Virus record (IMG/VR): IMGVR_UViG_3300037297_000066 | Span: 310,001 to 374,000 of that record | DNA length: 64,000 nt | Strand: one strand, 5' to 3' | Part shown: piece by piece, positions 26,403 to 49,621 of the stretch | Layout: every line of letters begins with the position of its first letter | How positions within the stretch are numbered: position 1 is the first letter of the stretch | The notes under the pieces: generated by a model | Seen by the model: the letters and a program-made list of their open reading frames with translations, nothing else | Databases searched by the model: none | Told to the model about the DNA's origin: nothing | Made by a program: the position numbers and the translations under genes

Positions 26403-28193
26403 ATGAGCCGCAAGACTTCGAATCTGTCCGACATTGCCCAAAGGGTGCGGTGTCGATACTTGTTGGCTGCTCAAGGGCTGGAAGGGGCTGACTTGAGCTC
26501 CACAAAAGGTTCAACCGATTCAGAAGGAACGGTCAGAACGGCATCTTTCCCCTTTCAGAAGCAGGATGGCCCTTCCGGCTCTCCTGCGGGCAACCAGAAG
26601 AGGGATATCCCCAAGGACCACCCCTTCGACCCCCGATCTCTAAAGCCTCTCAGCAAGGCTTTATGGGCCTCTAGTGTGGGTCTTGGGCACGCACTCACGG
26701 CCTACCGGTATCTGTCACGTCTCAAGAGTGCCACGATCAGTCCGGACGGCCTGTTGGGAGGGCGGGGGTACGTGATGCCCGTGTCCGAGATGCGCCGGAA
26801 GCTCTACGAGGCATGTGAAGCCCTGAGCAACCTCTCGGATACGCTGTATGACGAGATTTCCGCCCCGCACTGGAAGCCCCGTTTGGCTCAACTCGACGAG
26901 AATACGGCTGAGGATGTGGAGCGCTTCGTCGAAGAGTCTCAGCAAGTGCTGGATAACCCTGAAGAGGGTGCTGAGGACAAGATCAAGGAGATCGAGGAGG
27001 AAAACGACGGTAACTCTGAGACTTCTAAGGAAAAGTCTTCTCAGTTGCCGGAAGCGGGGCAGGACTCGTCGCTTTCTGCTGAAATGGCTCCGCAGGAGAA
27101 GGAGGCCCGCCTTCGAGGGGTCCCAAAGCTCGTTGCCTATCTGGATGACCATCAAGGGTTTTCCAAGAAGGGCGCTCTGGTCACCATGGAGCAGCTTTTG
27201 GCGTGGAGCGAGGATGATTCTGTACCTCGTGTAGACAACAGGGATCCTGGTGAGGGACAAGGGCCTTTCGGTTCCTTCAACAAAGACGAGCCTCTTGTTT
27301 CTGACGAGTGGGGGCAGCAACAGGGAGGGCGGTTCGATGATGACTATGACTACCCTTCTGAGTGGGAAAATGACCTGCGGATGGCAGGGATGCTGGTCTA
27401 TCTCAATGACGGCACTCCTGTAGACCCTACGGATCTTCCTTCTGGTGTGCCCTCCAACTCTGTGCCTTTGACTGAAGTTCAGGAGCGTCTTGGTCAATTG
27501 GCCGGTGTGGTAGAGGTGCAAGCTTCTGAAGGACCTAGCACCCTGGCCGAGATCAAAGAACAGTTTGGGGTGGATGTTAGCCCTATCAGGTTTTCTCAGT
27601 CGGTGATGCCGGAAGACTCTACGCCTACTGAAGCTTGGGACTATGGGTTGGGGTATGGTGCCCGCGGACAAGGCGTCTTGGAGATGGAAGTTCCGGGACC
27701 TCAATCCGAGCTCCCTTCGTCTGCAGCGCCTGAATGGGGTTCTGGGGGGGATGCCGTAGATGTGTCTCTGAATGAGCGTCGTGGGCAAGGTCGTGGGCAA
27801 GGGGGTTACGGTCGTGGACAAGGTCCTGGAAGGGGCCAAGGACCTGGCTGTACAGAGGAAGGGCCAGGTCAAGGTCAAGGTGTTGGTCAGGGACAACGCC
27901 AGCGTATGCGTAAACGGGATCCCTCCAACTGCCCTCGTCTTGAATCCACCTTACCAGGAGACGGTCAGCCTCCTGTTGCCCGATCGGACTACTATTATGG
28001 TCCTGGCGGGGGTCCTACTCTGTCAGAGTCAGGGCTGCCTTCAGAAGCAACTCCGGTAGAGGACTTCGATACCGGGCTTCTCGATACATCGTATAAGTCG
28101 GAAGATGTAGAAACCCCTTACGTGCGTTTCGAAGACTCCTTCAGTGGGTACCGAGACGATCCGTTCCACGACTGGCCGCAAAAGGATGCGTGA
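26403..28193 (+). CDS. Large acidic low-complexity head-associated protein with GQG repeats
   Basis: ATG 26403; helical core (aa ~70-200), acidic linkers, GRGQGRGQG... tract near 27779-27900. Confidence 0.75.
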   Translation: MSRKTSNLSDIAQRVRCRYLLAAQGLEGADLSSTKGSTDSEGTVRTASFPFQKQDGPSGSPAGNQKRDIPKDHPFDPRSLKPLSKALWASSVGLGHALTAYRYLSRLKSATISPDGLLGGRGYVMPVSEMRRKLYEACEALSNLSDTLYDEISAPHWKPRLAQLDENTAEDVERFVEESQQVLDNPEEGAEDKIKEIEEENDGNSETSKEKSSQLPEAGQDSSLSAEMAPQEKEARLRGVPKLVAYLDDHQGFSKKGALVTMEQLLAWSEDDSVPRVDNRDPGEGQGPFGSFNKDEPLVSDEWGQQQGGRFDDDYDYPSEWENDLRMAGMLVYLNDGTPVDPTDLPSGVPSNSVPLTEVQERLGQLAGVVEVQASEGPSTLAEIKEQFGVDVSPIRFSQSVMPEDSTPTEAWDYGLGYGARGQGVLEMEVPGPQSELPSSAAPEWGSGGDAVDVSLNERRGQGRGQGGYGRGQGPGRGQGPGCTEEGPGQGQGVGQGQRQRMRKRDPSNCPRLESTLPGDGQPPVARSDYYYGPGGGPTLSESGLPSEATPVEDFDTGLLDTSYKSEDVETPYVRFEDSFSGYRDDPFHDWPQKDA

Positions 28194-29857
28194 TGTCTGA
28201 TCTAGGCGATATCAGCAAGTTCATCGAAGGTTCGGTGCCCAACCTGGATTGGTTGGAAGTCGATGATAGGGATTACCAAGCCCTGGATCGGTTGCCCAAA
28301 CAGAACTTGGACATTCTTCCCGACTTGGAGGAGGCATGGAGCCACGGGGACGCTCCTCTCCATGGCAATTTGGAGCCTAACACTGGAGAATCTTTGACCA
28401 TGCTCGATGTTGGTCGAAGGGGCCCCAAAATGGCCACTGTCAAGGAGATTGCCAGGGTTGCTGTGAAGGCTTTGAACGAGTCTTCCAGCGTGCCCGCCAT
28501 GGTTAAGCTGCTTGCTAGTGCGTTTGATCAGACCTCCCTGCAGGCAGCTCATCCTGTGCTTAAGCGGGTAGTGGCGTCGTTTCGTCAACACCAGAAGCAG
28601 GCGGCCACCAAAGCCCCGGGGGAGTTCTCAGGGCAGCGTCAGACGGTGGCCAAGAAGGAAGCTTCATCCAAGGAGCAGGTGCAGCAGGGCTTGGAGGCCG
28701 TGTCCAAAACGGCTGCCGACGAATCCAAGAAGCAGCAGTGGAAGGTTGCGGCTGAGAAGGCTGCTCCAGTTGTGGCTCTGCTCCGTCGGGAAATGCTCAA
28801 GGGGCGTTCGGCCTCGGACATTCTGAAGGCTCTGAAGATGTCTTTTGATGTCCGAGATCTGCAGGCTACTCGGGAGCATTGGGAGCCTCTGTTCCGTAAG
28901 GTAGGGCTTTACGGGGTGGTATACTCTAGTCAGGATTCGTTCCCAACCTGTCCTGAGGGAGCAGACTTCTTGGCCAAGCACGCTTCCTCGGTGAAGGGAA
29001 TTGTAGCTGGCGACAAGTGCGGCTCTTGCATCTTCAGCCAGGTCGGTCGCTGCATGATGTATGGCCGCCGACTAGTGGCTAAGGAGGGAGATCTCATCAC
29101 AGCAGAGATGGTTCAGGCTTTGTTGGACGAGCATAAGCTCTCTGGTCGTCTGCCCCACGACTTCCAACCTACCGGGGAGACGTTGGAAGAGAATCTGAAG
29201 GCTATTCATGAGGCGGCCATGTCTCCCAAGCCTTCTGCTGCACTCAATCTTCGGAGTACCGTCGAGCGGGCTTTCACAGGAGCCACCCGTCAGCACAAGA
29301 CGAGTTCTATGACCGTCAGGGAAGTGGTGAAGACAGCTTGTCAGTACATGAACGAAGGTTTGTATGGCCGAGAACTGTTGGCCGTGCTCAAGTCTCGATT
29401 CGAAGAGCGAGACATTCAGGCATCCGTTCCCGAACTGAAGCAGGTCTTGGCAGAACAAGGGTTGCAGGGCTACAAGTTCGTCGATCCTACGGTCTACGAC
29501 GACTATGGTAAAGGCTGCAAAGTTGCTGCTCGAAAGTTCCGTACCAAGACGGCGGTGCAGTATCTCAAGGTGGGTAGCAAGTGCAATTCTTGTGTCCATC
29601 AAACTAGTCCGGGCTTCTGTTCTGTCATCCACAAGCAGCTCGTGGTGGAGCCCCCATACGTAGACAAGGCGGCAGAGCAGAAAGCCATCTTGAGTTCTGG
29701 ATCTGCTATAGATGTTCCCCTTGGCAACCTGGTCAACAGTGGGTTGAGCATGTTGCAAGAGTACCAACTGCAACAGTCCGGAGACGTTGATCTGAACCCC
29801 GAAGCTCCTTCGATGGAGGTGTCCGTAGAGTTGGGTACGTCCGAAGTGAAGCTCTAG
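28190..29857 (+). CDS. Protein with a duplicated Cys4 domain
   Basis: Two copies of a helical + G(L)Y/QG + C-x21/22-C-x2-C-x7/8-C unit and a partial third copy at the N-terminus. Confidence 0.8.
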   Translation: MMSDLGDISKFIEGSVPNLDWLEVDDRDYQALDRLPKQNLDILPDLEEAWSHGDAPLHGNLEPNTGESLTMLDVGRRGPKMATVKEIARVAVKALNESSSVPAMVKLLASAFDQTSLQAAHPVLKRVVASFRQHQKQAATKAPGEFSGQRQTVAKKEASSKEQVQQGLEAVSKTAADESKKQQWKVAAEKAAPVVALLRREMLKGRSASDILKALKMSFDVRDLQATREHWEPLFRKVGLYGVVYSSQDSFPTCPEGADFLAKHASSVKGIVAGDKCGSCIFSQVGRCMMYGRRLVAKEGDLITAEMVQALLDEHKLSGRLPHDFQPTGETLEENLKAIHEAAMSPKPSAALNLRSTVERAFTGATRQHKTSSMTVREVVKTACQYMNEGLYGRELLAVLKSRFEERDIQASVPELKQVLAEQGLQGYKFVDPTVYDDYGKGCKVAARKFRTKTAVQYLKVGSKCNSCVHQTSPGFCSVIHKQLVVEPPYVDKAAEQKAILSSGSAIDVPLGNLVNSGLSMLQEYQLQQSGDVDLNPEAPSMEVSVELGTSEVKL

Positions 29858-29870
29858 AAAGAGAGCTAGT

Positions 29871-30440: not shown

Positions 30441-30448
30441 GGAGTACT

Positions 30449-32449
30449 TTGGCTTCTCCCAGCAACAAAGGCGTAGCCTCTATGATTCGCCAGGCGAATC
30501 GAGAGGTGAAACGCAATCAGAAGGATGTTGTTCAGACCGAGAGAGACGGTCGTAGCCGCACCTTCAGTGTTCTGGACTACATCGAACAGCCCTGGGGCCT
30601 CAACATGAGGTTGTTTCCAGCGCAAAGGTTCTTGGTCAAGCTCTACTACAACATCCCTTTGGACACAGCGCTGCCTGAGCGTCCTGAGTCTCGTATTCAG
30701 ATCCCGGACATGTTTGCTACTCGGATCCTCTACGAGTTCAGCGAGCGTCAGTATTTGAGCTACCTGTTTAATGAGGGGCGCTGCAACGTCGGGAAACAAG
30801 ACCTAGAGCATGATCGTAGGGAGTTGATCCTTGCCATCGGTAGAAGGGCGGGAAAGACAACTTTATCAGGTATTTTCGCTAGTTACGAGGTTTACCGGCT
30901 GCTCAATCTCTACAACCCTCAGGAGTACTACGGGCTTCCCAACGGCAATCGAATCCAGATCATCTCGGTAGCTACGGACAAGGATCAGGCGGGGCTGCTC
31001 TACAACGAGGTGAGCACACACTTGGCCAAGTGCGAGTACTTCAAACCCTACATGAGCAACTTCACTCAGTCTAGGGTGGACTTCCGGACGCCTTATGACA
31101 TCGAGAAGTTTGGGGTCAACACCTGGCACGAAAACGGTCGCTTCGTTTCTCAGCAAGGCAAAGCCACGCTTCGGGTGACCTTCAAGAGCTGTATCGCCAA
31201 GGGTCTCAGAGGCTCTGGAAACGTGGTTGTGATCTTGGATGAGATCGCCCACTTCCAGGACAAAGGCAACAGCTCGGCGAAAGAGATCTACGATGCAGTG
31301 ACTCCTTCGACCGCTGCCTTTTCCCGAAAGGATCCGGAGACGGGGCTACCTGCAGTGGACCCTGAATCGGGAGACAAGGCTCCTGTTGAGGCTAGGGTTA
31401 TCCTCATCTCCTCTCCGTTGGGTAGGTCAGGGAAGTTCTTTGAGCTGTTCGATCTAGCCATGCACGGGGGTGAAGGCTCTGAGAACCTGTTGGCGATTCA
31501 AGCTCCCACTTGGGAGATCAACCCAACAATCCCGACCTCCTACTACAAGGAGAAGTATCACGCTGACCCTCAGGTTTTCTCGGTCGAGCACGGAGCTCAG
31601 TTCTCGGATCAAACCAAGGGTTGGATCGAGCGTGAGGGGGATATCCAAGACTGTATTCGTTCAGAGCTTCGTCCCCAGCAGCAAGCTCGTCCCAAGATGC
31701 CTCACCAGATGGGCATTGACGTTGGATTGGTAGGGGACGGAACGGGTATCGTCATCACGCACATAGAAGACGACAAAGTCGTGTTGGACTACCACGAGGT
31801 TTGGTATGCGGGGGTGGATTGGCGAGAAAGCAACCCCCATTTAGGCAACCTTTACCCTACCGACTATGCAAAGGTCCTTGGGGATCTTGAGCGTTTGGAC
31901 TTCGATGAGATCGCCAACTGGATAGTGGCTTTGTCCAAACGCTTCCACATTGTGCAGGGGTTGTTTGACCGTTGGAATGGTATCCCTCTTGAGCAGACTC
32001 TCCACAAGCGGGGCTTCAAGCAGTTCAAGGCTGAGTTCTTCACTCGGGACACGACCAGCAAGATCTACCAGACGGCCAAGATGTTGATGTTGGATGAGCG
32101 CCTGGTACTCTATGACTGGCCGATACCAGAGCAGGGGGCTGTAAAGCACTCAGGGCTCATAGCGGAGCTTCTGGCTTTGCAGGCTCGGCAGATTTCCAAG
32201 AATTTGGTGTTGGTGGAGGCCCCTGTGAAACGGGGCGCCCATGACGACCTGAGTGACGCCTTTGTACGCAGTGTTTGGCTATCTGTGGAGCAAATGCTCA
32301 ATCAGAAGCATACGGCCCACGGGGGAGTCTACCGTCCCCATGTGGCCAGTAGCATGACTTCCCAGCGGTATCAGGCTATGCGGATGAGAAAGCATGGAGT
32401 TCCAAGCAGGATGCCTGGCAGGGTTCGGCAGCGCTTTGGGGTTAGGTAG
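30449..32449 (+). CDS. terL: Terminase large subunit
   Basis: IGRRAGKTT Walker A, VVILDEIAHF Walker B, ISSP coupling motif, nuclease MGIDVG...DGTG, HDDLSDAFV. Confidence 0.92.
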   Translation: MASPSNKGVASMIRQANREVKRNQKDVVQTERDGRSRTFSVLDYIEQPWGLNMRLFPAQRFLVKLYYNIPLDTALPERPESRIQIPDMFATRILYEFSERQYLSYLFNEGRCNVGKQDLEHDRRELILAIGRRAGKTTLSGIFASYEVYRLLNLYNPQEYYGLPNGNRIQIISVATDKDQAGLLYNEVSTHLAKCEYFKPYMSNFTQSRVDFRTPYDIEKFGVNTWHENGRFVSQQGKATLRVTFKSCIAKGLRGSGNVVVILDEIAHFQDKGNSSAKEIYDAVTPSTAAFSRKDPETGLPAVDPESGDKAPVEARVILISSPLGRSGKFFELFDLAMHGGEGSENLLAIQAPTWEINPTIPTSYYKEKYHADPQVFSVEHGAQFSDQTKGWIEREGDIQDCIRSELRPQQQARPKMPHQMGIDVGLVGDGTGIVITHIEDDKVVLDYHEVWYAGVDWRESNPHLGNLYPTDYAKVLGDLERLDFDEIANWIVALSKRFHIVQGLFDRWNGIPLEQTLHKRGFKQFKAEFFTRDTTSKIYQTAKMLMLDERLVLYDWPIPEQGAVKHSGLIAELLALQARQISKNLVLVEAPVKRGAHDDLSDAFVRSVWLSVEQMLNQKHTAHGGVYRPHVASSMTSQRYQAMRMRKHGVPSRMPGRVRQRFGVR

Positions 32450-33203: not shown

Positions 33204-35029
33204 TGCCTGACTACTTTTCCAACACTCCAGAACCTTCCTATATCGCGAGGACGTCGGTACGAACTACTCGTCCGTACGTTTCAGGGGGATACCACACTCA
33301 GCTGACGGCCCGTGAGCGTTTGGCTCGTGAGCAGCAGAAACTGGCTAGTTGTGGTTCTTTTGGGGGAGCTGTTGGAGGGATGGGTTACTCAGGGGGAGCT
33401 GCTGGTGGTTTCGGCAACACCATCATGTCGGGGTCGGACAACTTCTTCTCGGTCCAGCTTTCGACTGACTTTCTAGAGCTCCCACAGACACTTAGAGAGA
33501 AGCGGGAGATCTACCGCCACTTCTACAACTCTGATGAACTGGTGGGACAGGCCATTGACTTGCATACGGAACTTCCGTTGAGCAAGGTTCGGTTGGCTCC
33601 TCCCAAAGCTCGGACGGCTCCTGAAGGGTTCAAGGATCCTCACGACTACAGTCGCTACATCCTGTCTAGATTCGAAAGGATGTGTAAGAGGACGAAGCTC
33701 TTTCAGCGCCTCGTCACAGTAGTCCACCACTATTGGTTGGATGGGGGCGCCGTGGTGTTTGCGGAGGACAGTGCTGTCCCTATCCCCGATAACGTTGGTT
33801 TTGATGAGACTGTGGTAAAGCAAGCTGTTCTCACAGAGTCAGGGGAGGCTCTTGAGGTTCCTAAAAAGACTTTGGTAGCCCGAGCAGACAAGGAAGAACA
33901 AGAGCTAGCCTACTACCAGAGACACTACAGTGGTTGGGCTAAGCTCATTGTGATTCCATTGGATCGAGTGAAGGTCACTACGGCAGACTTCACAGAGAAG
34001 GTTAGGATTGAGCTCATTCCTAGCAATCGGACTAGAAAGCTGGTGCAGGATGCTCAGATGGGTAATCCTGAGGCTGAGCAGATGGTCCGGGACATCCCTG
34101 AAGAGGTGCGGAGTCACATCGAGAACGGGAACCTGATTCCTCTTGGTACGAATCCTGACGAGGGTAGTTTTGCGGTCATGGTCACGGCGGACAAGAGCGC
34201 CGAGCCCCACCTGGGTCGGAGCATTCTTGACCGTTGCTTACGGACTCTCTACTTCCGAGAAAAGCTTCGCCAGGCTCAGACCAGCATTGCTTCTCGGGCG
34301 ATGACCCCCAAGCGTATTGTGTGGGCGGAAGGGCTTTCTGACGCTGATACAGACGATCTTCGGGAGCAGGTGGACCTGGCTCTGGTGGATCCTGACTACA
34401 GCATCGTTGCGAACTACGAGATTCGTTGGGAAGAGATGGGGGCTCGGGACCGCCTTCTGGATCTTTCCTCGGAGTATGAGAACACCCAGCGTCTGTTGAT
34501 CTCTGGCTTGGGTGTGACCGAGAGTCTGATGAGTGGGGAGTCTCTTTACTCCGGGGATCGCCTCAAGCTAGAAGTCATCAACCAACGCTACCTGTACCTT
34601 AGAGAGGTTCTGCAGGACTTCGTGGAAGAGTCCTTGTTCAAGCCGGTGGCTCGACGTATGGGGTTCGTTGAGACTGATGAGTGGGGCCAAGAGGTAGTTC
34701 TCTTCCCCCGTCTCAGCTTCACCCGACTACCCCTTCGAGACAGCCAGGATACTTTTGATGCCCTCTTCAACCTCTACCAGAAGGGTTCGATCAGTATTGA
34801 CCTCATTCTGGAGATGTTGAATATCGATCCTGAAGATACCCGGGCCAAGATTGAAAAAGACTTGTTCACGGTCAACGATGCCCTCTTCAACGAGGTCATG
34901 CGTAGCGTCTACTCTGAGGTGGGCCGTGCTTTGGCCGAGAAGACGGATTTGGTAGAGAAGATCGCTGCTTACCTCAAATTGGACATGACCAAGGGTGGTG
35001 AGGACGAAGGTGGCGGGGGTAGGTATTGA
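33203..35029 (+). CDS. Portal protein
   Basis: 608 aa between TerL and protease; YRHFY...LVGQAIDLHTELP, YWLDG, GRSILDRC, GLGVTESLMSGE, VLQDFVEESLFKPVA. Confidence 0.8.
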   Translation: MPDYFSNTPEPSYIARTSVRTTRPYVSGGYHTQLTARERLAREQQKLASCGSFGGAVGGMGYSGGAAGGFGNTIMSGSDNFFSVQLSTDFLELPQTLREKREIYRHFYNSDELVGQAIDLHTELPLSKVRLAPPKARTAPEGFKDPHDYSRYILSRFERMCKRTKLFQRLVTVVHHYWLDGGAVVFAEDSAVPIPDNVGFDETVVKQAVLTESGEALEVPKKTLVARADKEEQELAYYQRHYSGWAKLIVIPLDRVKVTTADFTEKVRIELIPSNRTRKLVQDAQMGNPEAEQMVRDIPEEVRSHIENGNLIPLGTNPDEGSFAVMVTADKSAEPHLGRSILDRCLRTLYFREKLRQAQTSIASRAMTPKRIVWAEGLSDADTDDLREQVDLALVDPDYSIVANYEIRWEEMGARDRLLDLSSEYENTQRLLISGLGVTESLMSGESLYSGDRLKLEVINQRYLYLREVLQDFVEESLFKPVARRMGFVETDEWGQEVVLFPRLSFTRLPLRDSQDTFDALFNLYQKGSISIDLILEMLNIDPEDTRAKIEKDLFTVNDALFNEVMRSVYSEVGRALAEKTDLVEKIAAYLKLDMTKGGEDEGGGGRY

Positions 35030-35055: not shown

Positions 35056-38000
35056 GTGCAGCCGATCTGGGCCACCAAAAACGATTTGGAGTCGGAGAAC
35101 GAGGAAACTGAACGTCTCGTTCGAGAAGCTCCTAAGAAAAAACCCCCTCGTCGAGACCGGCGACGGGAACGGGTGAACCCTGATCGAGACCTTGATACGC
35201 AAGGGGATCCGGACCTGAAGAATGATCCGGATCTGAGCCTAAACTACAAGGACGTGGGGGGCTCCGTATCGGAGCGGGTGGCCTTTAGGTTTGTTGCCAA
35301 AAAAGACCGTATCAAGGTCCGGCGTAAAGACACGGGTACCGTTGTCTACGTCACCAAGGAGAAGCTCAGGGAAGAAGGCGGTAAATACGAACTGGTCAAA
35401 CCAAAGGAGGATCCTCCTTGGGGGGGCAAGGGAGCCCAGCCGGGGGAGACCGATACAGAGCCTCCTTGGAAGGAAAAAGGGCCTCCTGAGAAGCCTGGTA
35501 AGGAGCCCCAGAAGCCTTCTGAGAAGCCTCCCGTTGAGGAGGGGGCCCAACCCGAGAAAGAGGAGAAGCCTGCTGAAGGGGGCCCTGAGGAGCCTGGAAA
35601 AGGGGGAGAGAAGCCTGCCGAGGGAGAGCATACTGAAGAGAAGCCGTCGGCCGCTGAGGCTGAAATCGACAAGCTGATCGAGCAGGACCCTTCATTCCAA
35701 AAAGCCCTCTTGTCGGTGCAGGAAAAGGCTAATGCCTACGCTCAGAAATCAGAGGGCATTCTCAAGGAGTTGGAGGGCCTGGAGAAGGATAGCAGCCCCG
35801 AAGCTGCTGAGCGAAAGAAGGCTCTAGTTGATGAGCTCAATTCTGGTCAGGATGAGCTGAATTCCTACATGGAGGCTGTCCAGTCTAGAGTGGACAGAGC
35901 TCAGGCCAAACAAGATTTGGCGCAACAAAAGGCCGATAAGGAGCAGGCAGAGGCCGAGGCTGAGGCAGCCAAATCAGAGGCTGAAAAGGCTGGGATCAAA
36001 GATCCTCAACGGCCTGAGCCTACTGAAGCGGAACGAATGGAAGCGATGGAGATGGTGGTGGACACCTTCCCTCCAGACATCGCTGCCGACATCATTGCCA
36101 AAGGGTACCATCCCTCAGATCTTCAGAGCATGGCGGCTTCCTATGAGGCTGCCAAGGTTTCTCCCATTCCCAAGGGAGATTTGAAGGACTTCGCTGCCAA
36201 GGTTGGGAAGATCTACCAAATTGACCCCAGCAAGGTGAAGCCTCCCAAGACCTGGGAGAAGGAAGGGCGTGAGGTCCCCTTTGAGGAGTTGAGTCCCAAA
36301 GAGCAGTCGGAGGCTATGCGTCAGCACCAGATGCAGACGGTGGCCATGAGTCTGGCAGCCAAAGACCAGCTTACGGAGGCCCTGACTCAAAGAACTCGCT
36401 CGGGGAAAGCTCAGATTCCTGAGGAACTGGCCGGTACCCTAGCTGACTTCATGCTGTCTCCAGAGGGAAAGGGTCGGGAGGATCAGGCTAAGAATCTCGC
36501 CTCCCAAACCTTCAAGATTACTAGGGAAAAGGGCGAAGCAGAGAACATCAAGGATGGCGTAGTCAAGAAGCTTTTGGGGTCCTTGCCGAAGGAAGCTCAG
36601 CAAATCGCTTCAGGCTTCTTGCAGGCCAATGACTATCTGGTAGCTCGGGAGAAATTTCTCGACTCTGGGGAGATTTCTGAGCATCAGAGCCCGGGGGATA
36701 TTGTTAGTGGTTTCCGAGACTTGGACAGTTACTTCCAGAAGAGATCCAAGTTGTATCCTGGGGGGAATGACCAGCATGCGGGGAAGCTGCTGCAGAGCCA
36801 GATTCGAACTCGTCTGAAGGAACTGGACCAGCGCAAGTACGGAGAAGTCCGAAAGCGTTTGGATGCCATTGCTGCAGATGAGTACGACATCGCTGAAGGT
36901 AAGTGGAGAAAGGCGCGTAAAGCCTGGGAAGTAAAGAAGAAAAAGCACCAGCAGAAGGTCAGAGAGTACGACAACGCTCATCTGATCACAGACTGGAAGA
37001 ACCTTCCTGAAGGGCATCCTGGAGAGTTTACAGAGGCTCCCCCTGAGCCCCCGAAGAAGCCTCTTCGGTATGATTTGGTTCGAGGGAAGCGTCCTCGGGT
37101 TTGGGAGGAGCAGTTCCGGCGCATGGGCCAGAAGGTAGCTTCTCGATATCTCAAATCCTTTTATCCCTGCTCTGTACCGATGGACTCGAATTCTAGGACA
37201 GGTGCCTACCATGGGGTAGAGCCTGCGGACAACTCCCCCCCAGAAGGGTATGCCGGCTGGCAGCAAGCTCATCAGAGAGATCTAGGAGAGTCTGATTTCG
37301 ACATCATCTTGCAGAGTGCTCGGGAGTGGATGAAAAGTCCTGTTCTTTCCAAGGACATCGACGGTTACCTGCCTGACATGCAGCTTCGGGCGGCCTTGGA
37401 TTTGGCTATTCAGAGCAGCCCCTACAATCGAGCCATCAATCCTCAGACCTACAACATCTTGTTGGCTCGGTTGGCCAACATCCCTCCTGAGGAGTTCCTG
37501 GGGCAAACACTTCGTTCGGCCACAGTGTTGGTGAGGACTGCTGGAAGCAGCTACGTCGTCGAGAAGATGAGCCTAGTTGTTTATGGAAAGGGTCCTTTCA
37601 ATATCGATGTGATTCGAGCCATTGAAGGGCAGTACTTTCAGTACCGGGACGAGGAAGGGAATGTCCGGGATGATGGGTACGCTCATGTCGATGATGTGAA
37701 ATACGGACGAGCTCTTCCCCGGATGCAGGAACTGCAAGGCTTCGTGCCTGAAGGCTCTCTCAACATCTCTTATCCCAAAGGAGCCTCTGCTGAAGCCTTC
37801 AAGGCTGTGCAGGCGGCTTGTCGCAAACATAAGCTCCAGGTCGAAAAGGCCAAACCCGGATACAAGCCGAGCTTTCGGAAAATGCCGGGATCAAAAACCC
37901 GAAGGGCGCAATCCAGCAAAGGTGAGGACAGCATGAACAAGCAAGCGGCCAATGGCATTCTGGGTCGTCTCGATCGGCTCGCCGACAACATCCAGAACAA

Positions 38001-40557: not shown

Positions 40558-41979
40558 ATGCGTGAGAGAACCACTTGGAGCCTAGAAGCTATTGCCGCCA
40601 GGACTGCAGCGGAGCAGGAGCGTACCGCTGACGATCCTCGGGCAATGAATCAAGACCACCATTCTCAGCAACCGTCGGCAGACCAGTACGAGATCGGTGG
40701 GCCCAGCGACTTCGCAGAGGATGTGACTCCTCCCAACTGGAAGGACGAGCAGGCTGGTGGCGAGACGAAGAGGGATGAGATCGGACTTCCCCAGTTCGAC
40801 TCGGACACCTTCAAGCAAGGCGCCTTGGACGAGGAGCATCTGCTCAAGAAGTCCGAGGTCTGTTCGAAGGTGGCCTCTTTGATCCTTGGCGAGGCCACAG
40901 AGGCTGCTGTCGAAGATCAGGCTGTCGAGTTGATGGACCTCTCCGATGCCACTCTTCTGTCGATGTACGCTCGTGTACTCGAAGCCAAGGGTCAGGTTCC
41001 TCCCCAGTTCTTGAAGAACAAGGGCGACGACAAGGGCGACGACAAGGGCGACGACAAGGGTCAAGAGCAAGACAAGGAAGCTGCCCAGCAGAAGCAGCAG
41101 CAGGACCAAGCCGAAGACCAGGAAGGTCAAGAAGGCAAGGAAGCTGCCCAGCAGAAGCAGCAGCAGGACCAAGCCGAAGACCAGGAAGGTCAAGAAGGCA
41201 AGGAAGCCGCTCAGCAGAAGCAGCAGCAGGACCAAGCCGAAGACCAGGAAGGTCAAGAAGGCAAGGAAGCTGCTCAGCAGAAGCAGCAGCAGCAGGGTGA
41301 AGGCGAGGAAGGCGACCAGGAGCAAGGCAAGGAAGCCGAGGCTCTCAAGCAGGCTTCCGAGGCTCTGACCCTTTTGGCTCAGCAGCAACCGTTCCAGGCT
41401 CAGGCTCAGCAGTTGCTATCGCTGGTTCAGCAACAGTTGGCCCAACAGCAGCAGCAGTCTTGCTCGACTCCGATGTCGCAGCAACAGCAGCAGGCTCAGC
41501 AGCAGATGCAGCAGGCTCAGCAGATGATGGAGCAGGCTCAGCAGATGATGCAGCAAGCCCAGCAGCCGCAGCCGCAACAGTCGATGGAGGACGAGCTCCT
41601 CCAGCAGTTGCAGCAGGAGCCTGGTCAGGATGACCTGATGGAAGAGACCATCGAGATGGAAAGCCCTTCGATGGATGTCGGTGAGATCGCTCTGGACCAG
41701 CAGGATGCAGAGACTCTCGGACAGCTCTTCGCTTCCAATCCGGAAGTTCAGCAGGCCAGGCAGGCTCAGGCTCTGGAGACCGGGGTGCCTCAGGCTCCCT
41801 CAGCTCCAATGACTCGCACTGCTTCGGTCAATCCGTCCCTGCGAACTGTTGGCACTCAGCCGACAGGTGGGGTCTCCCAATTGGGAGGTGCTGCTGCTGC
41901 TGACTCCGGCTCCCAGGATACGGACAAGCTTTCAGCTCTCTGGAATTCGGCTCCTGACGTCAAGGATGTTTTCCGCTGA
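40558..41979 (+). CDS. Capsid scaffolding protein, Gln-rich with tandem repeats
   Basis: 473-aa low-complexity helical protein between protease and capsid genes; AAGGAG RBS. Confidence 0.7.
   Translation: MRERTTWSLEAIAARTAAEQERTADDPRAMNQDHHSQQPSADQYEIGGPSDFAEDVTPPNWKDEQAGGETKRDEIGLPQFDSDTFKQGALDEEHLLKKSEVCSKVASLILGEATEAAVEDQAVELMDLSDATLLSMYARVLEAKGQVPPQFLKNKGDDKGDDKGDDKGQEQDKEAAQQKQQQDQAEDQEGQEGKEAAQQKQQQDQAEDQEGQEGKEAAQQKQQQDQAEDQEGQEGKEAAQQKQQQQGEGEEGDQEQGKEAEALKQASEALTLLAQQQPFQAQAQQLLSLVQQQLAQQQQQSCSTPMSQQQQQAQQQMQQAQQMMEQAQQMMQQAQQPQPQQSMEDELLQQLQQEPGQDDLMEETIEMESPSMDVGEIALDQQDAETLGQLFASNPEVQQARQAQALETGVPQAPSAPMTRTASVNPSLRTVGTQPTGGVSQLGGAAAADSGSQDTDKLSALWNSAPDVKDVFR
41018..41060 (+). repeat. 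12-bp tandem repeat, about 3.6 copies (ACAAGGGCGACG; encodes KGDD)
   Basis: Read directly from sequence. Confidence 0.9.
41073..41292 (+). repeat. 63-bp tandem repeat, about 3.5 copies (encodes KEAAQQKQQQDQAEDQEGQEG)
   Basis: Units start at 41073, 41136, 41199 and 41262 and are nearly identical. Confidence 0.92.
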
Positions 41980-42701: not shown

Positions 42702-43580
42702 ATGAATCAGGTTTCCAACGCTGTCAAGCAGCAGATCATCAGCGAGTACATCAAGACCGCAGCTGGCCGTGCCAAGCTGGCAGCCTCGATGACCCAACCT
42801 CTGCGTCTCCGCAGAGACTACACCGCCGTCGGCCGCAAGACCTTCTTGGTCGAAGAGCTGCCTGATGGCGCACTCCCCATCTACGACAAGGACCCCGAGG
42901 TCACAGCGTACGTCGTGGGCGAGGAAGGCGAGAACATCGTCGCCATCCAGAAGCCACGTCGTGTGATCTTCCCGTTGTTCGAGATCGCCTCGAATCCCGA
43001 GATCCCCTTGACCCAGATCAAGGAGCGTCGTTTCGATCTGATCGAACGATCCCAAGACCTGGCCAAGGCTCAGATTCAGGCGGCCGAGGACGAGCGGGTC
43101 TTCGCCGTTCTGGACTCCATCGCCGTATCGGGCTTCGACACGCTTCCGGGTGGAACAAACCCGGATGTGAACGTCGTTGCTCCGATCAGCCCGTCGGTGC
43201 TGGCTGACGCCTTCGCTGAAGTGGAGAGGCACGACCTTCGGGTCGCTCGCATCTACATGAATGCGGTGGACTACGCCGACATCCGCAAGTTCGGTCGGGA
43301 CATCCTGGACATCGAGAGCCAGGCCACCCTGCTGAAGACGGGTCTGCAGGCAACCCTCTGGGGCGCTCAGATCATCACGAGCCGCCTGGTTCCGGCCGGG
43401 TACGTGTATGTCTGTGCAGAACCGGAGAACTTCGGCCGGTTCCCCGTTCGGACCGAACTTACCGTTCTGTCGGCAGACGATCCGAAGGCTCGAACCATCG
43501 GGTTCAGCTGCTTCCAGAACGTCGGAATCGGTGCCTTCAACCCCCGTGGGTTGGTCCGCATCGTGGTCACTCGACTGTAG
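42702..43580 (+). CDS. Major capsid protein (HK97-like fold)
   Basis: 292 aa; GRKTFLVEELPDGALPIYD, spine-helix-like DLIERSQDLAKAQIQAAEDERVF, LWGAQIITS, G+V; strong GGAGG RBS; followed by a hairpin. Confidence 0.8.
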   Translation: MNQVSNAVKQQIISEYIKTAAGRAKLAASMTQPLRLRRDYTAVGRKTFLVEELPDGALPIYDKDPEVTAYVVGEEGENIVAIQKPRRVIFPLFEIASNPEIPLTQIKERRFDLIERSQDLAKAQIQAAEDERVFAVLDSIAVSGFDTLPGGTNPDVNVVAPISPSVLADAFAEVERHDLRVARIYMNAVDYADIRKFGRDILDIESQATLLKTGLQATLWGAQIITSRLVPAGYVYVCAEPENFGRFPVRTELTVLSADDPKARTIGFSCFQNVGIGAFNPRGLVRIVVTRL

Positions 43581-45099: not shown

Positions 45100-45108
45100 G
45101 GCTTGTGG

Positions 45109-45420: not shown

Positions 45421-45460
45421 TCTTAGGGGGAGCCTATTTGCTCTTCAGGAGATGATCAAG

Positions 45461-46570: not shown

Positions 46571-46613
46571 GCGGTTTCTATTTGTGGGCGGCCTAATCTG
46601 AATAGGTTGCCTC

Positions 46614-48746
46614 ATGAGCAAAACCGGTGACAGTGCTGGGCGTCCGAAAGATGCCTCCGCCACAGTTTATCTGATGGAGGAGCTGGGGGACGCTCGCCTC
46701 CGTTGCGACCAACTCATTCGGTATCTGGATGAGGCGGTCAAACTCGTGGAACAGTCCAAGTACAGGGACCACTTCTTCGAGGTAGCGGGGCATCTCATCA
46801 CAGGTCTGCCCGAGGCAGCCTTCAAGCTGCAGAAAGCTCTCCAGGCGGTGGCACTGGCGGCCGACCGTTTGGACTATGAAGAGGTCAAACAAGAACTTCG
46901 GCCCGAGAAGGTCGAGGAGCTTGAGCGAGTTCTTCAGGATGTTCGTATCCGCCAAATCAGACGTCGTTCGGAGCCTCCCATGAATTACAAGGATACCGCT
47001 GAAAGACTCAGACTTCTCGCTGCCAAGATCAAGGAGAGCCAAGCGTTCCCTGTGGTGGAGACGTTGCTTCTGGCGAGTGAGTTGGAAGGGCAACAGAAGG
47101 TGGCTAGTAACCGAGAGGTCTTGGCGGATTTCTTCGAGGGCCTGGCGACTTCTCTGGATGAGGCCCAGCCGGGAGAGATGAGTCGAGCCTATTTGGCCAA
47201 GCTGCTTCGGCGCGTGACCGGGGAGAACCTTCAGGTCAAGCCTCCTGTCAAGCAGGCGGAGTCAGAGGTGACTGCTCTTTCTACCGAGGTAGATGTCAAT
47301 CGTCTGGAGCGGGCGCTTGTTAATGCCGAGGCCCAGGTCAAGGAGATGCGACATTCTCTGAATCTGTACAAGAGAGACCCTGGTCGGAACCAGCCTCAGC
47401 TGAGTAATCTGGTGATAGCTGCCAGCTCTGCTGCCAAGGTTTTAGACCGGCTCATTATCAAGCCCTTGTGGGGGAAGCTGGGAGCCAAGGAAGAGGATCG
47501 AGAGTCTCGTTTCGAGGAGGGGAAGCCAGCGGACCCCACGAAGGACATGAGTCCCGAGGATGCCAAGAAGTGGCGAGAGCAGAATCGTAAGCACCGAGAC
47601 GAGTTCAAGGGCGCTGCTGGAGGAGACCCTGCTGACTTGGCTCACGAGATCCTAGAGCAAGGACTTCGGCATCCTGCTCTGAAGGAGATCACCAGATCTT
47701 GGTCGAAGGTGGAGGCCGATCTGAAGAAGGCGGAGACAGAGCACAAGAACCTGCATCGGTTTGGTGTTGGAAGCACCGAGGATGTGACTCTTGTCAATGC
47801 TCACATCGTTCCGGCTCTCAAGTCCTATCGTGATATGGTGGACATCATCATCGAGCAGATAAGCAAGCGTCTGAAGCGACGTACGGCTTCGGAAGAGGAT
47901 CGAGAGTCTCGTTTCGAGGAAGGGAAACCGGCCGATCCGACCAAGAACATGAGTCCTGAGGACGCCAAGAAGTGGAAAGAGCAGAACGATAGGCACAAGG
48001 ACAAGTTCAAGAGTGCTGATGCCCAAAAGGAGTCTGCCAAGTGGATCCAGAAGGCCATCAAGGACAAGGGAGCTCTTCATCGTCACTTCGGGATCCCTGA
48101 AGACGAGACGATCCCCACCGAGAAGATCAAGAGTGAGCTAGCCAAGCTGAAGAAGAAGGAAGACAAGAGCGACGCTGACAAGAAGCTCCAGCATCAGCTC
48201 AACATGGCTCTCACCCTGCGTGGTCCCAAGGTTCCCCCTCCAGGTGGGAAGAAGGCTGGCGACGAGTGGAAGGTGGAGGCTGTAGAGGTCACGGCTGCTC
48301 TCAAGCCTAAGGACAAGAAAGTCGTCGATGCTTTTGCCGACAAGAAGCCGATGGATGGTGACTTGCTCGACACGGACGGTAAGAAGCTGGAGAAGTCTGG
48401 CCTGGGTGGCGGTACATTCGCCGAGTGGAAGGGTGGCAAGATCCACATTCTGAGCCCGGGTGGGAACCGGAGCCATGACGCAATCCTCCGCTACATGAAG
48501 AAGTCGATCCCCAAGAACGACCTTGCCGACCATCCCCAGCTGAGGGCCGCGTCAGACCCTTGGAAGGCCGCAGCCCTCAAGTTCAAGCCTGGTGACAAGG
48601 TGAGGGTCAAGGACTCTCATGGTTCTGCCAAGTTCCGGGGCGACACTGGAGAGATCGAAAAGAACGTTCCGATGGGCAAGTACTACGTCCAGCTCAAGAA
48701 GAACGGACGGTCTTTGGTGGACGAGGGAGACCTGGAAAAGGCGTGA
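46614..48746 (+). CDS. Modular (polyprotein-like) head-associated protein
   Basis: Duplicated 40-aa unit, KWIQKAIKDKGALH module, C-terminal KOW/SH3-like FKPGDKVRV module; modules bounded by [KR]-x-A motifs. Confidence 0.8.
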   Translation: MSKTGDSAGRPKDASATVYLMEELGDARLRCDQLIRYLDEAVKLVEQSKYRDHFFEVAGHLITGLPEAAFKLQKALQAVALAADRLDYEEVKQELRPEKVEELERVLQDVRIRQIRRRSEPPMNYKDTAERLRLLAAKIKESQAFPVVETLLLASELEGQQKVASNREVLADFFEGLATSLDEAQPGEMSRAYLAKLLRRVTGENLQVKPPVKQAESEVTALSTEVDVNRLERALVNAEAQVKEMRHSLNLYKRDPGRNQPQLSNLVIAASSAAKVLDRLIIKPLWGKLGAKEEDRESRFEEGKPADPTKDMSPEDAKKWREQNRKHRDEFKGAAGGDPADLAHEILEQGLRHPALKEITRSWSKVEADLKKAETEHKNLHRFGVGSTEDVTLVNAHIVPALKSYRDMVDIIIEQISKRLKRRTASEEDRESRFEEGKPADPTKNMSPEDAKKWKEQNDRHKDKFKSADAQKESAKWIQKAIKDKGALHRHFGIPEDETIPTEKIKSELAKLKKKEDKSDADKKLQHQLNMALTLRGPKVPPPGGKKAGDEWKVEAVEVTAALKPKDKKVVDAFADKKPMDGDLLDTDGKKLEKSGLGGGTFAEWKGGKIHILSPGGNRSHDAILRYMKKSIPKNDLADHPQLRAASDPWKAAALKFKPGDKVRVKDSHGSAKFRGDTGEIEKNVPMGKYYVQLKKNGRSLVDEGDLEKA
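47489..48017 (+). repeat. Two dispersed copies of a ~126-bp coding repeat (EEDRESRFEEGKPADPTK[DN]MSPEDAKKW...FK)
   Basis: Copies begin at 47489 and 47891; the first 30 nt are identical. Confidence 0.9.
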
Positions 48747-49621
48747 AGCAGCCGCTCGTTCCTCGACCGCCCTATGGAGAGGGCCAGTCTCGGGAGCCAC
48801 AAGCGGAAGCTAGGCTCCCGCAGGGGGAACCTGCCGACAAAGGGCTGCCTCTGGACCCTGACTACTCGGGATACCAGACGTTTGCCAAGCCAGTGGAGGA
48901 CATTCGGGAGCCGGACAACGATGACGAGTCCATTTGGAGGGTGGATGGCCCCAACGACCTGACCAAGGACCAGAGCCATCCTGATGTGAACGAGGAGAAC
49001 TCTGACCAGAGCACCAGCTACCCTGGCCGAGGGTTCGATCAGGACAACTCCAAGACCAAATACCCGTATCGGGACGACCGGCCGAACACACACAACTCGG
49101 CTCAACCCAACCCTTGGCACGTAACCCTCCTTCATTTGCTCCAGAAGGCCCCCTCAAGGCTTTTCAGGGCTGGGGGAAGGGTCAAGGTCGCTGCTACCTC
49201 AGAGGAGATTCTGGCGGGTCTAGACCCTGATTTCCAGGAGCGAGCCCAGGCGTGTACGGTGACCCTCAAGAGGGCGGATATCCGAAACCTGAGGTGGATA
49301 TTCGTGGTCAACTGTGGGCACAAGGATTGGGCTTCCAAGATCAAGGCCGTTCGGGGCAAGGGCAACATCACCGACTTCAACAAGCTGGACTTGCAAATCA
49401 CCTGTTCCTGTCCGGCTTGGCGGTGGTTGGGTCCGGAATTTCACGCCAAAGGGGATCACTACATTGATGGGAAGCCTCGGGGCACGGCTTCACCTCCCAA
49501 CATACGAGATCCTGAGCGGGACAACTTCGTCTGCAAGCATGTTGCCGCTGTTTTAGCTTTTACCCGGGGATGGAAGGTGCCTGTGAAAGTCATCCGGAAG
49601 CCCCGGCCCAAAAAGAAATGA
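48743..49621 (+). CDS. Protein with an acidic N-terminus and a SWIM-like zinc finger
   Basis: ITCSCPAW...VCKHVAAVL. Confidence 0.75.
   Translation: MKQPLVPRPPYGEGQSREPQAEARLPQGEPADKGLPLDPDYSGYQTFAKPVEDIREPDNDDESIWRVDGPNDLTKDQSHPDVNEENSDQSTSYPGRGFDQDNSKTKYPYRDDRPNTHNSAQPNPWHVTLLHLLQKAPSRLFRAGGRVKVAATSEEILAGLDPDFQERAQACTVTLKRADIRNLRWIFVVNCGHKDWASKIKAVRGKGNITDFNKLDLQITCSCPAWRWLGPEFHAKGDHYIDGKPRGTASPPNIRDPERDNFVCKHVAAVLAFTRGWKVPVKVIRKPRPKKK

What the first reader, a model, noticed from the sequence alone, without database searches (positions are those of the whole stretch)
26403..49621. [KR]-x-A-[AS] motif punctuates nearly every head-module protein: candidate maturation-protease code
Seen: VRTAS (26403 ORF); KQAA, KEAS, KTAA, KVAA (28190); KLAS near the portal N-terminus; KVAS, RTAG, KQAA (35056); RQAA, RTAT (38309); RQAA, RAAF, KEAA (protease); RTAA, RTAD, KEAA x4, KQAS, RTAS (scaffold); KTAA (MCP aa 17-20); KVAS, RTAS, KGAA, RAAS, KAAA (46614); KVAA (48743). 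Many sit at borders between low-complexity linkers and globular segments, and the scaffold tandem repeat multiplies the motif. Established: prohead proteases of T4 and phiKZ cut many head proteins at short consensus sites. Inference: the 39021 protease cleaves after [KR]-x-A, a specificity different from the Glu-directed T4/phiKZ enzymes. Caveat: the motif is short and occurs by chance.
Basis: partly seen in the sequence, partly recalled or inferred. Interest (0 to 1): 0.72.

Follow-up and report, generated by a model that had tools for sequence, protein, structure and literature searches.

The report
Predicted capsid-protease cut sites, huge phage
A short motif (Lys/Arg, any residue, Ala, then Ser/Ala) is selectively kept in the head-assembly proteins of a 437-kb phage and its relatives, and is most likely the cutting signal of their herpesvirus-like capsid protease, a specificity not yet described for any phage and directly testable in two cultured relatives.

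Summary
Every listed motif instance exists. With the scaffold's tandem repeat collapsed, [KR]-x-A-[AS] occurs 34 times in the head module against about 14 expected (0 of 3000 shuffles). The rest of the 437-kb genome has O/E 1.13.

Controls argue against an artefact:
- Order-permuted versions of the motif sit near 1.
- Other reading frames are not enriched.
- T4/phiKZ-type Glu motifs are not enriched.

The signal replicates in 50 related head modules (O/E 1.93 against 0.81-1.25 for controls). It also appears in the cultured phage Tunturi_5 (head proteins 23 vs 6.3, tail proteins 2 vs 6.6), whose scaffold shows no detectable similarity to this one.

Sites are kept in place in 40-92% of orthologues while the middle residue and K/R vary. 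Thr is preferred at P2 and Ser at P1'.

The 39021 protein has the herpesvirus-assemblin/T4 gp21 fold (Z 11.2 and 9.5), with conserved His127, Ser178 and His204. Conserved sites flank its catalytic domain. A conserved RTAS lies 51 residues before the scaffold C-terminus, resembling the herpes R and M sites (x-x-A|S).

Cleavage itself, and the exact bond cut, remain inferred. "Nearly every head protein" is overstated: 12 of 19 ORFs carry a strict match.

The parts
39021..40514 (+). Prohead protease, 497 aa. It comprises an N-terminal propeptide of about 40 aa, an assemblin-fold catalytic domain (about aa 50-278), a variable linker and a C-terminal helical domain (about 361-497).
   Evidence: It matches PHROG 18299, 'head maturation protease'. 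The AF2 model of aa 1-300 has pLDDT 84. VIA Z is 11.2 to VZV protease and 9.5 to T4 gp21, and the next unrelated fold scores 6.7. The family has 1511 representative clusters.
39399..39401 (+). His127 codon, the candidate catalytic His.
   Evidence: It is invariant in 45 homologues and is conserved in Tunturi_5, phage G and Myrna.
39552..39554 (+). Ser178 codon in TLSMGC, the candidate nucleophile.
   Evidence: S178-M-G is invariant in all alignments. It lies 51 residues after His127, compared with 55 in T4 gp21 and 69 in HCMV (those two spacings are from my own knowledge).
39630..39632 (+). His204 codon, the candidate third triad residue. It lies inside a CxxC...CxH segment.
   Evidence: It is conserved in the window, Tunturi_5, phage G, Myrna and L060. 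It sits 26 residues after the Ser, as in the herpesvirus Ser-His-His triad. Its geometry was not checked.
39132..39143 (+). Protease R38-Q-A40-A41, the candidate N-terminal autoprocessing site.
   Evidence: A40 is invariant in 23 homologues, while the flanking residues are only about 19% identical. It lies at a low-pLDDT segment just before the first strand.
39834..39896 (+). End of the catalytic domain, with two conserved Ala sites: Q272-V-A274-F, and R289-A-A291-F. These are the candidate 'release' sites.
   Evidence: A274 is 98% conserved and A291 100% conserved, in flanks of 20-26% identity. Phage G has KIAS and Tunturi_5 has HVAS at the A274 position.
40113..40124 (+). Protease K365-E-A367-A, a candidate site at the start of the C-terminal domain.
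   Evidence: [KRH]-x-A is nearly invariant in 23 homologues, and the flanks are about 23% identical.
40558..41979 (+). Scaffold-like Q/E-rich protein, 473 aa, with nine strict or relaxed sites.
   Evidence: It lies between the protease and the MCP. It has 8 strict matches against 0.74 expected. Forty-eight orthologues average 4.83 against 0.90, O/E 5.4.
41069..41292 (+). A 63-bp tandem repeat of 3.6 copies that multiplies KEAA.
   Evidence: Tandem Repeats Finder gives 97% matches. The copies are not retained in orthologues, except the first one, which is 54% relaxed.
41815..41826 (+). Scaffold R420-T-A-S, the candidate 'maturation' site, 51 residues before the C-terminus.
   Evidence: It is retained in 88-92% of 48 orthologues, after a hypervariable linker and before the conserved RTVGTRPTGGVS block. 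Myrna gp97 has PRTAS about 17 residues from its C-terminus.
40600..40632 (+). Scaffold N-terminal sites RTAA (aa 15) and RTAD (aa 22).
   Evidence: At aa 22, P3 is K/R in 94% and P1 is Ala in 96% of orthologues.
42702..43580 (+). Major capsid protein, 292 aa, with K18-T-A-A (42753-42764) and K25-L-A-A (42774-42785) in the N-arm.
   Evidence: It matches PHROG 2522 and PF05065. Both sites are 93-100% conserved. The second site is kept in Tunturi_5 (KLAAS), in L002 (RLAAS) and in phage G (RVAL).
33338..33349 (+). Portal K46-L-A-S, before a Gly-rich variable linker.
   Evidence: [KR]-x-A-[SN] is kept with a variable P2 in 64% of 42 orthologues, against 0% for the reversed control. Phage G portal has AKQAAS and RKMASP near its N-terminus.
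38309..39016 (+). ORF38309, 235 aa, function unknown. It carries sites RQAA (38567-38578), RFAA (38690-38701) and RTAT (38792-38803).
   Evidence: Forty-seven orthologues give O/E 5.1. Site 87 appears as KEAS, KQAS, REAS, RLAS or RKAS in a loop of variable length.
46614..48746 (+). ORF46614, 710 aa, function unknown. Its conserved sites are KDAS aa 12 (46647-46658) and KGAA aa 332 (47607-47618).
   Evidence: It has 6 sites against 2.1 expected. Orthologues average 6.1 against 2.06. Retention is 70-90%.
49184..49195 (+). ORF48743 K148-V-A-A.
   Evidence: P1 Ala is 100% conserved and P3 is K/R in 92%, with flanks 28% identical.
28190..29857 (+). ORF28190, 555 aa, function unknown, with seven strict sites. 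Four of them lie at aa 136-188.
   Evidence: It has 7 sites against 1.27 expected. Its 119 homologues average 5.16 against 1.86, with hot spots near aa 155, 285 and 545.
37132..37143 (+). ORF35056 (1079 aa) K693-V-A-S. A further site, KQAA, is at 37939-37950.
   Evidence: Retention is 60% and 43-46%, against 0-7% for the reversed control.
30449..32449 (+). Large terminase. It is motif-free and serves as an internal negative.
   Evidence: It matches PHROG 2, 9 and 17415. It has 0 sites against 0.72 expected. Twenty-four orthologues give O/E 0.36.

Best explanation
[KR]-x-A-[S/A/N], with Thr favoured at the x position, is the recognition site of the phage's own prohead protease (39021-40514). 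This enzyme is a divergent Ser-His(-His) protease with the herpesvirus-assemblin/T4 gp21 fold.

Proposed mechanism, inside the assembled procapsid:
1. The enzyme cuts after the Ala. In protease notation P3 = K/R, P1 = Ala, and P1' is a small or polar residue.
2. It trims itself, removing an N-terminal propeptide of about 40 residues and separating the catalytic domain from its C-terminal domain.
3. It dices the scaffold-like protein, including removal of that protein's conserved C-terminal 51 residues at RTA|S. This would detach the scaffold from the shell.
4. It removes the N-terminal 20 or 27 residues of the major capsid protein and the N-terminal 48 residues of the portal.
5. It processes several proteins of unknown function that are probably internal head proteins: ORFs 28190, 35056, 38309, 46614 and 48743.

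Shown here: selection on the motif, its restriction to head proteins, its association with this protease family, and the protease fold.

Inferred: that the motif is cut at all, by this enzyme, and at the Ala|Ser bond.
For: 1. Enrichment specific to residue order and to the head module. [KR]TA occurs 15 times against 3.6 in head proteins, while the rest of the genome has O/E 1.14.
2. The signal is not at DNA level. All synonymous codons are used, K and R interchange, and the other five frames give O/E 0.4-1.5.
3. Replication in 50 related head modules. The target motif has O/E 1.93 and is the top pattern in almost every locus, against controls of 0.81-1.25. Free positions carry information: P2 Thr is enriched 8.9-fold and P1' Ser 2.8-fold.
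4. Homology-independent replication in Tunturi_5. Head proteins have 23 sites against 6.3, and tail proteins 2 against 6.6. Its scaffold gp332 has 9 sites but no detectable similarity to this scaffold, E = 4.8. Phage G protease and portal, and the Myrna protease-scaffold fusion, carry the motif too.
5. Positional retention with sequence turnover. Retention is 40-92% within +/-8 residues, against 0-10% for the reversed motif. By my own reading of the contexts listed, 7-8 of the 13 conserved Ala residues in variable surroundings have K/R two residues upstream, against roughly 13% expected from the K+R content.
6. Substrate pattern. O/E is 5.4 for the scaffold, 5.1 for ORF38309, 3.3 for the MCP and 3.0 for ORF46614, but 0.36 for terminase.
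7. Enzyme. The fold matches assemblins and T4 gp21. His127, Ser178 and His204 are conserved out to phage G and Myrna. Conserved sites sit at low-confidence borders of its own domains. No ClpP or S78 homologue was found elsewhere in the genome.
8. Precedent. Herpesvirus assemblins cut YLQA|T (R site) and VQA|S (M site, 37 residues from the scaffold C-terminus) (PMC4498786). SPN3US gp245 reads A-x-E| with Ser at P1' (PMC10052503). Both use the same P3-x-P1 register.
Against: - No proteomic or biochemical evidence of any cleavage exists for this phage, nor was any found for its cultured relatives.
- The motif was chosen after looking at the sequence, so the within-genome p-values overstate significance. 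The related loci share ancestry and are not independent. Only Tunturi_5, and to a lesser extent phage G, provide near-independent support.
- Phage G is ambiguous. Its head set has 6 sites against 3.0, but neighbouring uncharacterised genes have 9 against 2.9.
- The MCP N-terminus is conserved throughout, so site conservation there is uninformative.
- Protease-peptide co-folding gave no answer.
- The catalytic geometry of His204 was not checked, and it lies within a Cys-rich, possibly zinc-binding segment.
Confidence: 0.62

Rival explanations
1. The motif is under selection in head proteins, but it is a binding or targeting signal, for example for docking to the scaffold, portal or shell or for incorporation into the procapsid. 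Alternatively it is cut in a different register, for example after the fourth residue, with Ala at P2.
For: The conserved RTAS abuts a conserved C-terminal block that could be one binding element. The MCP sites lie in a fully conserved N-arm. Nothing in the data fixes the scissile bond. Co-folding gave no answer.
Against: The motif recurs many times per protein in unalignable linkers, which suits dicing better than docking. Three to four conserved sites bracket the protease's own domains. Characterised enzymes of this fold read P3-x-P1 and then a small P1' residue.
Confidence: 0.2
2. Chance plus local composition or helical periodicity. On this view, Ala/Lys-rich helical and low-complexity segments of scaffold-like proteins generate K-x-A-A by themselves, and the reader picked the pattern after the fact.
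For: The motif is short. Two proteins contribute 15 of the 37 hits, and four hits are one duplication. An exhaustive exact-residue pattern ranking did not single it out.
Against: Window shuffles of 10-30 residues leave z at about 5.5. Permuted and reversed orders are not enriched. Many sites sit in Gly/Pro-rich, non-helical contexts. The motif is retained in orthologues with a variable P2. It is enriched in the unrelated Tunturi_5 scaffold and depleted in that phage's tail proteins.
Confidence: 0.06
3. The sites are cut by a different protease, from the host or encoded elsewhere in the phage genome, rather than by the 39021 enzyme.
For: No enzyme-substrate link has been shown directly. The genome has 614 ORFs, most of them unannotated.
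Against: The motif co-occurs with this protease family across hosts as different as Acidobacteriota, Bacillus/Lysinibacillus and Mycobacterium. The protease carries conserved sites itself. No ClpP or S78 homologue is present in the genome.
Confidence: 0.05
4. A DNA-level signal, such as a methylation, restriction-avoidance or regulatory word, happens to translate as K-x-A-A/S.
For: None beyond the fact that the motif is short.
Against: All four Ala codons, both Lys codons, all six Arg codons and six Ser codons occur at the sites. The other five reading frames are not enriched.
Confidence: 0.01

Closest known systems
Herpesvirus assemblin (pUL26/VP24; MEROPS S21) with its R and M sites
   Same: The fold matches: VIA Z is 11.2 to VZV, 11.0 to PrV and 9.3 to HSV-2. 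The order and spacing His...Ser...His match. P1 is Ala, followed by Ser or Thr (YLQA|T, VQA|S; PMC4498786). A site lies at the end of the catalytic domain and another lies a few tens of residues before the scaffold C-terminus. In Myrna the protease and scaffold are one polypeptide, as in pUL26.
   Different: P3 is basic (K/R) rather than aliphatic, although [VLI]-x-A-S is also mildly enriched, 15 against 7.7. There are many sites per substrate and many substrates. The protease has a CxxC...CxH insert after the catalytic Ser. There is no sequence-level similarity: no Pfam or PDB sequence hit. In this phage the scaffold is a separate gene.
T4 gp21 (S77) and phiKZ gp175 / SPN3US gp245 (S80) prohead proteases
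   Same: The fold matches T4 gp21: Z 9.5, rmsd 2.0 A over 121 residues. The logic of a short P3-x-P1 code that cuts many head and internal proteins in large capsids is the same: 19 proteins in phiKZ, and A-x-E| with Ser at P1' in SPN3US (PMC10052503).
   Different: Those enzymes need Glu at P1. [LI]-x-E and [SAG]-x-E show no head-specific enrichment here, with O/E 0.9-1.3, no higher than in the rest of the genome.
Head modules of Bacillus phage G, Tunturiibacter phage Tunturi_5 and cluster C mycobacteriophages (Myrna)
   Same: The protease is homologous (39%, and about 30%, identity over the catalytic domain) and so is the MCP (47%, 38% and 30%). The same motif occurs in their proteases, portals and scaffolds.
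   Different: Their genomes are much smaller or unrelated outside the head module. The proteases of Tunturi_5 and phage G lack the C-terminal helical domain. No cleavage sites were found published for any of them in the library searched.

Membership tests
Assemblin-fold prohead proteases (herpes S21 / T4 S77 / HK97 S78 / phiKZ S80) | Shared beta-barrel assemblin fold | tested here: met
   The AF2 model has pLDDT 84. The top 37 PDB entries are all herpesvirus proteases or T4 gp21, with Z 7.3-11.2, followed by a drop to 6.7 for the unrelated MlaD. Foldseek probability reaches 0.97.
Assemblin-fold prohead proteases (herpes S21 / T4 S77 / HK97 S78 / phiKZ S80) | Catalytic Ser and His conserved and correctly ordered (His before Ser) | tested here: met
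   H127 and S178 are invariant in 45 homologues and in phage G, Tunturi_5 and Myrna. Their proximity in 3D was not examined.
Assemblin-fold prohead proteases (herpes S21 / T4 S77 / HK97 S78 / phiKZ S80) | Third triad residue (His in herpesviruses) | tested here: inconclusive
   H204 is conserved and lies 26 residues after the Ser. However, it lies in a Cys-rich segment that gives weak zinc-ribbon hits, and one relative (L002) has Cys there.
Assemblin-fold prohead proteases (herpes S21 / T4 S77 / HK97 S78 / phiKZ S80) | Match to a curated sequence model of one of these families | tested here: not met
   There is no Pfam hit for S21, S77, S78 or S80 even at E <= 10. PF04586 is not found in the genome. 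The only evidence is PHROG 18299 and weak language-model neighbours. It is therefore a distinct sequence family within the fold.
Assemblin-fold prohead proteases (herpes S21 / T4 S77 / HK97 S78 / phiKZ S80) | Gene placed between the portal and the scaffold/MCP | tested here: met
   The portal is at 33203, the protease at 39021, the scaffold-like gene at 40558 and the MCP at 42702.
Glu-directed cleavage code (T4 L/I-x-E, phiKZ S/A/G-x-E, SPN3US A-x-E) | Head-specific excess of x-x-E motifs | tested here: not met
   O/E in head proteins is 0.90-1.29, and 0.93-1.50 in the rest of the genome.
Herpesvirus-type cleavage code ((V/L/I)-x-A|S) | Ala at P1 with Ser/Thr/Ala at P1' | tested here: met
   At the third position only Ala is enriched (2.1-fold). 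Ser is the most enriched following residue (2.8-fold). This holds at sequence level only.
Herpesvirus-type cleavage code ((V/L/I)-x-A|S) | Aliphatic residue at P3 | tested here: not met
   P3 is mainly K (2.4-fold) and R (1.8-fold). Ile (1.8-fold) and [VLI]-x-A-S (O/E 1.94) are secondary.
Herpesvirus-type cleavage code ((V/L/I)-x-A|S) | Hydrolysis of the Ala|Ser bond | not testable with these tools
   This needs mass spectrometry or an enzyme assay. Co-folding gave no answer.
ClpP (S14) / SppA (S49) type prohead proteases (suggested by the 'SMG' motif) | ClpP/crotonase-like fold or a PF00574 match | tested here: not met
   There is no PF00574 match in the genome, and the fold is assemblin-like.

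The most novel reading that the evidence does not exclude
This large protease family has more than 1500 sequence clusters, and it spans soil and sediment huge phages, phage G and actinophages. On this reading it has kept the herpesvirus-style way of maturing capsids: Ala at P1, a release site after the protease domain, and a maturation site that clips the scaffold's capsid-binding tail. It would combine that with phiKZ-style wholesale processing of many internal proteins. If so, the motif is a sequence-only marker that predicts which proteins of uncultivated huge phages are packaged in the head, and where their mature ends lie.
Probability: 0.4. Interest if true: 0.75.

Novelty: new variant of a known kind. 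Interest (0 to 1): 0.6.

Why it matters
Proteolytic maturation codes are known for only a few phage proteases: T4, phiKZ/SPN3US, HK97 and 80alpha. None is known for the huge phages recovered from metagenomes.

A validated [KR]-x-A|S code would do three things:
- It would let mature capsid, portal and internal-protein ends be predicted from sequence for hundreds of uncultivated huge phages.
- It would point to candidate packaged or ejected proteins (ORFs 28190, 35056, 38309, 46614, 48743).
- It would strengthen the phage-herpesvirus link at the level of substrate specificity and processing layout, not only fold.

It is directly testable in two cultured phages, Tunturi_5 and phage G.

Tried and rejected
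- **First AF2 run.** The full-length protease modelled with 23 close homologues gave a poor model (pLDDT 56). It was replaced by aa 1-300 with 45 more diverse sequences.
- **PDB sequence-profile search.** No real hit.
- **Pfam at permissive E-values.** Only weak zinc-ribbon noise.
- **Co-folding.** The protease with scaffold residues 408-436 gave 'no answer' and is not evidence either way.
- **Exhaustive ranking of exact three-residue patterns.** It was dominated by Cys-containing and homology-repeated words and was uninformative for a degenerate multi-protein motif.
- **Literature.** No cleavage-site data were found for phage G, Tunturi_5 or cluster C mycobacteriophages. The phage G capsid paper (PMC7316594) is not held.
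- **The search for related loci with ORF28190 alone.** It found only the same phage. Homologues were obtained by protein search instead.
- **Protease C-terminal domain against the scaffold.** No similarity, so this phage has no herpes-like nested protease/scaffold pair.
- **ORF 42062 against phage G decoration protein gp26.** Not significant, E = 0.22, so I do not call it a decoration protein.
- **ClpP-type reading of 'SMGC'.** Rejected.
- **DNA-level explanation.** Rejected.

Full report
**Setting.** The window is bases 310001-374000 of a complete 437,331-bp virus record with direct terminal repeats. All head genes lie on the + strand:
- large terminase, 30449-32449
- portal, 33203-35029
- a 1079-aa ORF, 35056
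- ORF38309
- protease, 39021-40514
- a Q/E-rich scaffold-like protein, 40558-41979
- ORF42062
- a 292-aa HK97-type major capsid protein (MCP), 42702-43580
- further unannotated ORFs

The nearest records are an uncultured 485-kb phage, Tunturiibacter phage Tunturi_5 (309 kb), Bacillus phage G and cluster C mycobacteriophages.

- The strict motif [KR]-x-A-[AS] occurs 37 times in the 19 ORFs of 26340-49621, against 13.5 expected from each protein's composition. The other 595 ORFs of the genome give 176 against 156.
- Four KEAA copies come from one 63-bp tandem repeat. With that repeat collapsed the count is 34 against 13.4-14.2. This holds under whole-protein shuffles and under shuffles confined to 10-, 15- or 30-residue windows, and none of 3000 shuffles reached 34. 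Local composition is therefore not the cause.
- Ten order-permuted motifs with the same expectation give O/E 0.37-1.48.
- The head module is the best 19-gene window in the genome.
- Codons at the sites are diverse, and the other five reading frames are not enriched. The signal is in the protein.
- Two proteins, the scaffold and ORF28190, dominate. Without them the excess is 22 against 11.6, p about 0.004.
- Seven of the 19 ORFs have no strict site, so 'nearly every' is overstated.

**Replication and conservation.** The protease has more than 1295 close homologues and 1511 representative clusters.
- Eighty related loci were fetched. In the 50 loci of at least 18 kb (the near-identical L001 excluded), the motif's O/E is 1.93, against 0.81-1.25 for the controls, and it is the top pattern in almost every locus.
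- Positions that the motif definition leaves free carry information. P2 is Thr 8.9 times more often than expected. P1' is Ser 2.8 times more often. At the third position only Ala is enriched. At the first position K, R and Ile are enriched. In this genome [KR]TA occurs 15 times against 3.6 in head proteins.
- By orthogroup, O/E is 5.4 for the scaffold, 5.1 for ORF38309, 3.3 for the MCP, 3.0 for ORF46614, 0.36 for terminase and 0 for ORF42062.
- Sites are kept within +/-8 residues in 40-92% of orthologues while P2 and K/R change. ORF38309 site 87, for example, appears as KEAS, KQAS, REAS, RLAS or RKAS. The reversed motif is kept in 0-10%.
- By my own reading of the contexts listed, 7-8 of the 13 Ala residues conserved in otherwise variable surroundings have K/R two residues upstream, against roughly 13% expected from the K+R content.
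- The 119 homologues of ORF28190 average 5.16 sites against 1.86.
- These loci share ancestry, so the cleanest support comes from Tunturi_5. Its scaffold gp332 has no detectable similarity to this one (E = 4.8) yet carries 9 sites. Its gp328 carries 15. Its head set has 23 against 6.3, while its tail set has 2 against 6.6.
- Phage G's protease and portal carry K-x-A-[AS] despite an Ala-poor proteome. Its result is less clean, though, because neighbouring uncharacterised genes are also enriched.
- Myrna gp97, annotated as tape measure, is a protease-scaffold fusion with PRTAS near its C-terminus.

**The enzyme.** No Pfam or PDB sequence match exists.
- A model of residues 1-300 (pLDDT 84) matches herpesvirus proteases and T4 gp21 before anything else. 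Z is 11.2 for VZV and 9.5 for T4 gp21 (rmsd 2.0 A), and the next fold scores 6.7.
- His127, Ser178 (in TLSMGC) and His204 are conserved out to phage G and Myrna. Their order and spacing match the herpesvirus Ser-His-His triad. The role of His204 is uncertain because it sits in a CxxC...CxH segment.
- The genome has no ClpP or HK97-type protease match.
- The protease itself carries conserved sites at the borders of its domains: R38-x-A40, Q-V-A274, R289-A-A291 and K365-x-A367. Each lies next to low-confidence or variable segments.

**Mechanism proposed.** By analogy with every characterised enzyme of this fold, recognition is P3-x-P1 followed by a small P1' residue. Examples are herpes YLQA|T and VQA|S (PMC4498786) and SPN3US A-x-E| with Ser at P1' (PMC10052503).
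- Here that gives [KR]-x-A|[S/A/N].
- The layout mirrors herpesviruses. There is a 'release' site after the catalytic domain. There is also a 'maturation' site, RTA|S, 51 residues before the scaffold C-terminus. It follows a hypervariable linker and precedes a conserved block, RTVGTRPTGGVS, which I infer to be the shell-binding tail.
- The further scaffold sites would dice it for exit.
- MCP K18-T-A|A and K25-L-A|A would remove a 20- or 27-residue N-terminal peptide. Portal K46-L-A|S would remove 48 residues.
- T4/phiKZ-type Glu motifs show no head-specific excess.

**Limits.** No cleavage has been observed. Co-folding was uninformative. No proteomic cleavage data for the relatives were found. 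The motif was chosen post hoc. The register of the cut, and the identity of the protease that makes it, are inferences.

**Verdict.** It represents a new predicted specificity within a known kind of system.

Noticed in passing
window 42702-43580 and loci L002-L081: The 292-aa MCP is extraordinarily conserved, with median 92% identity across related loci. In the same loci the neighbouring protease, scaffold and portal are about 50%, 41% and 64% identical. The constraint on this small capsid protein in very large capsids is unexplained.
   Followed up: partly
protease homologues P0051, P0123, P0125, P0135 etc.; L002 8399-11161, L049, L078, L081: Many homologues of the protease are 600-1960 aa long, and the catalytic domain is matched in 2-5 separate stretches. 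One (P0051) carries Hint/intein Pfam domains. Inteins or other insertions seem to interrupt this protease gene repeatedly.
   Followed up: no
window 39582-39707 (protease aa 188-229): An invariant C188-x-x-C191 ... C202-x-H204, plus C227-G-H229, lies directly after the catalytic Ser. It gives weak zinc-ribbon Pfam hits. A metal-binding insert in an assemblin-fold protease would be unusual.
   Followed up: partly
L084 4701-8336 (Mycobacterium phage Myrna gp97): This protein is annotated 'tape measure'. However, its N-terminus is homologous to this prohead protease, and it sits just upstream of the MCP. It looks like a 1211-aa protease-scaffold fusion, like herpesvirus pUL26.
   Followed up: partly
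genome 243538-244386 and 266383-267249 (outside the window, upstream): Two ORFs far from the head module have an excess of the motif: 4 against 0.56, and 3 against 0.40. They could be further packaged substrates encoded elsewhere.
   Followed up: no
window 41018-41060 and 41485-41566: The scaffold gene holds further short tandem repeats: a 12-bp unit x 3.6 that encodes GDDK repeats, and 12/21-bp Q-rich units. The gene appears to evolve by repeat expansion.
   Followed up: no
window 30449-32449 and orthologues; L083 tail genes: Terminase (O/E 0.36 in 24 orthologues) and the Tunturi_5 tail proteins (2 against 6.6) have fewer motif matches than composition predicts. This may reflect avoidance of accidental cleavage.
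   Followed up: partly
L001 / L085 (IMGVR_UViG_3300042731_003040, 108 kb): A second public contig carries a 99-100% identical copy of this head module. The same phage was therefore assembled at least twice.
   Followed up: no
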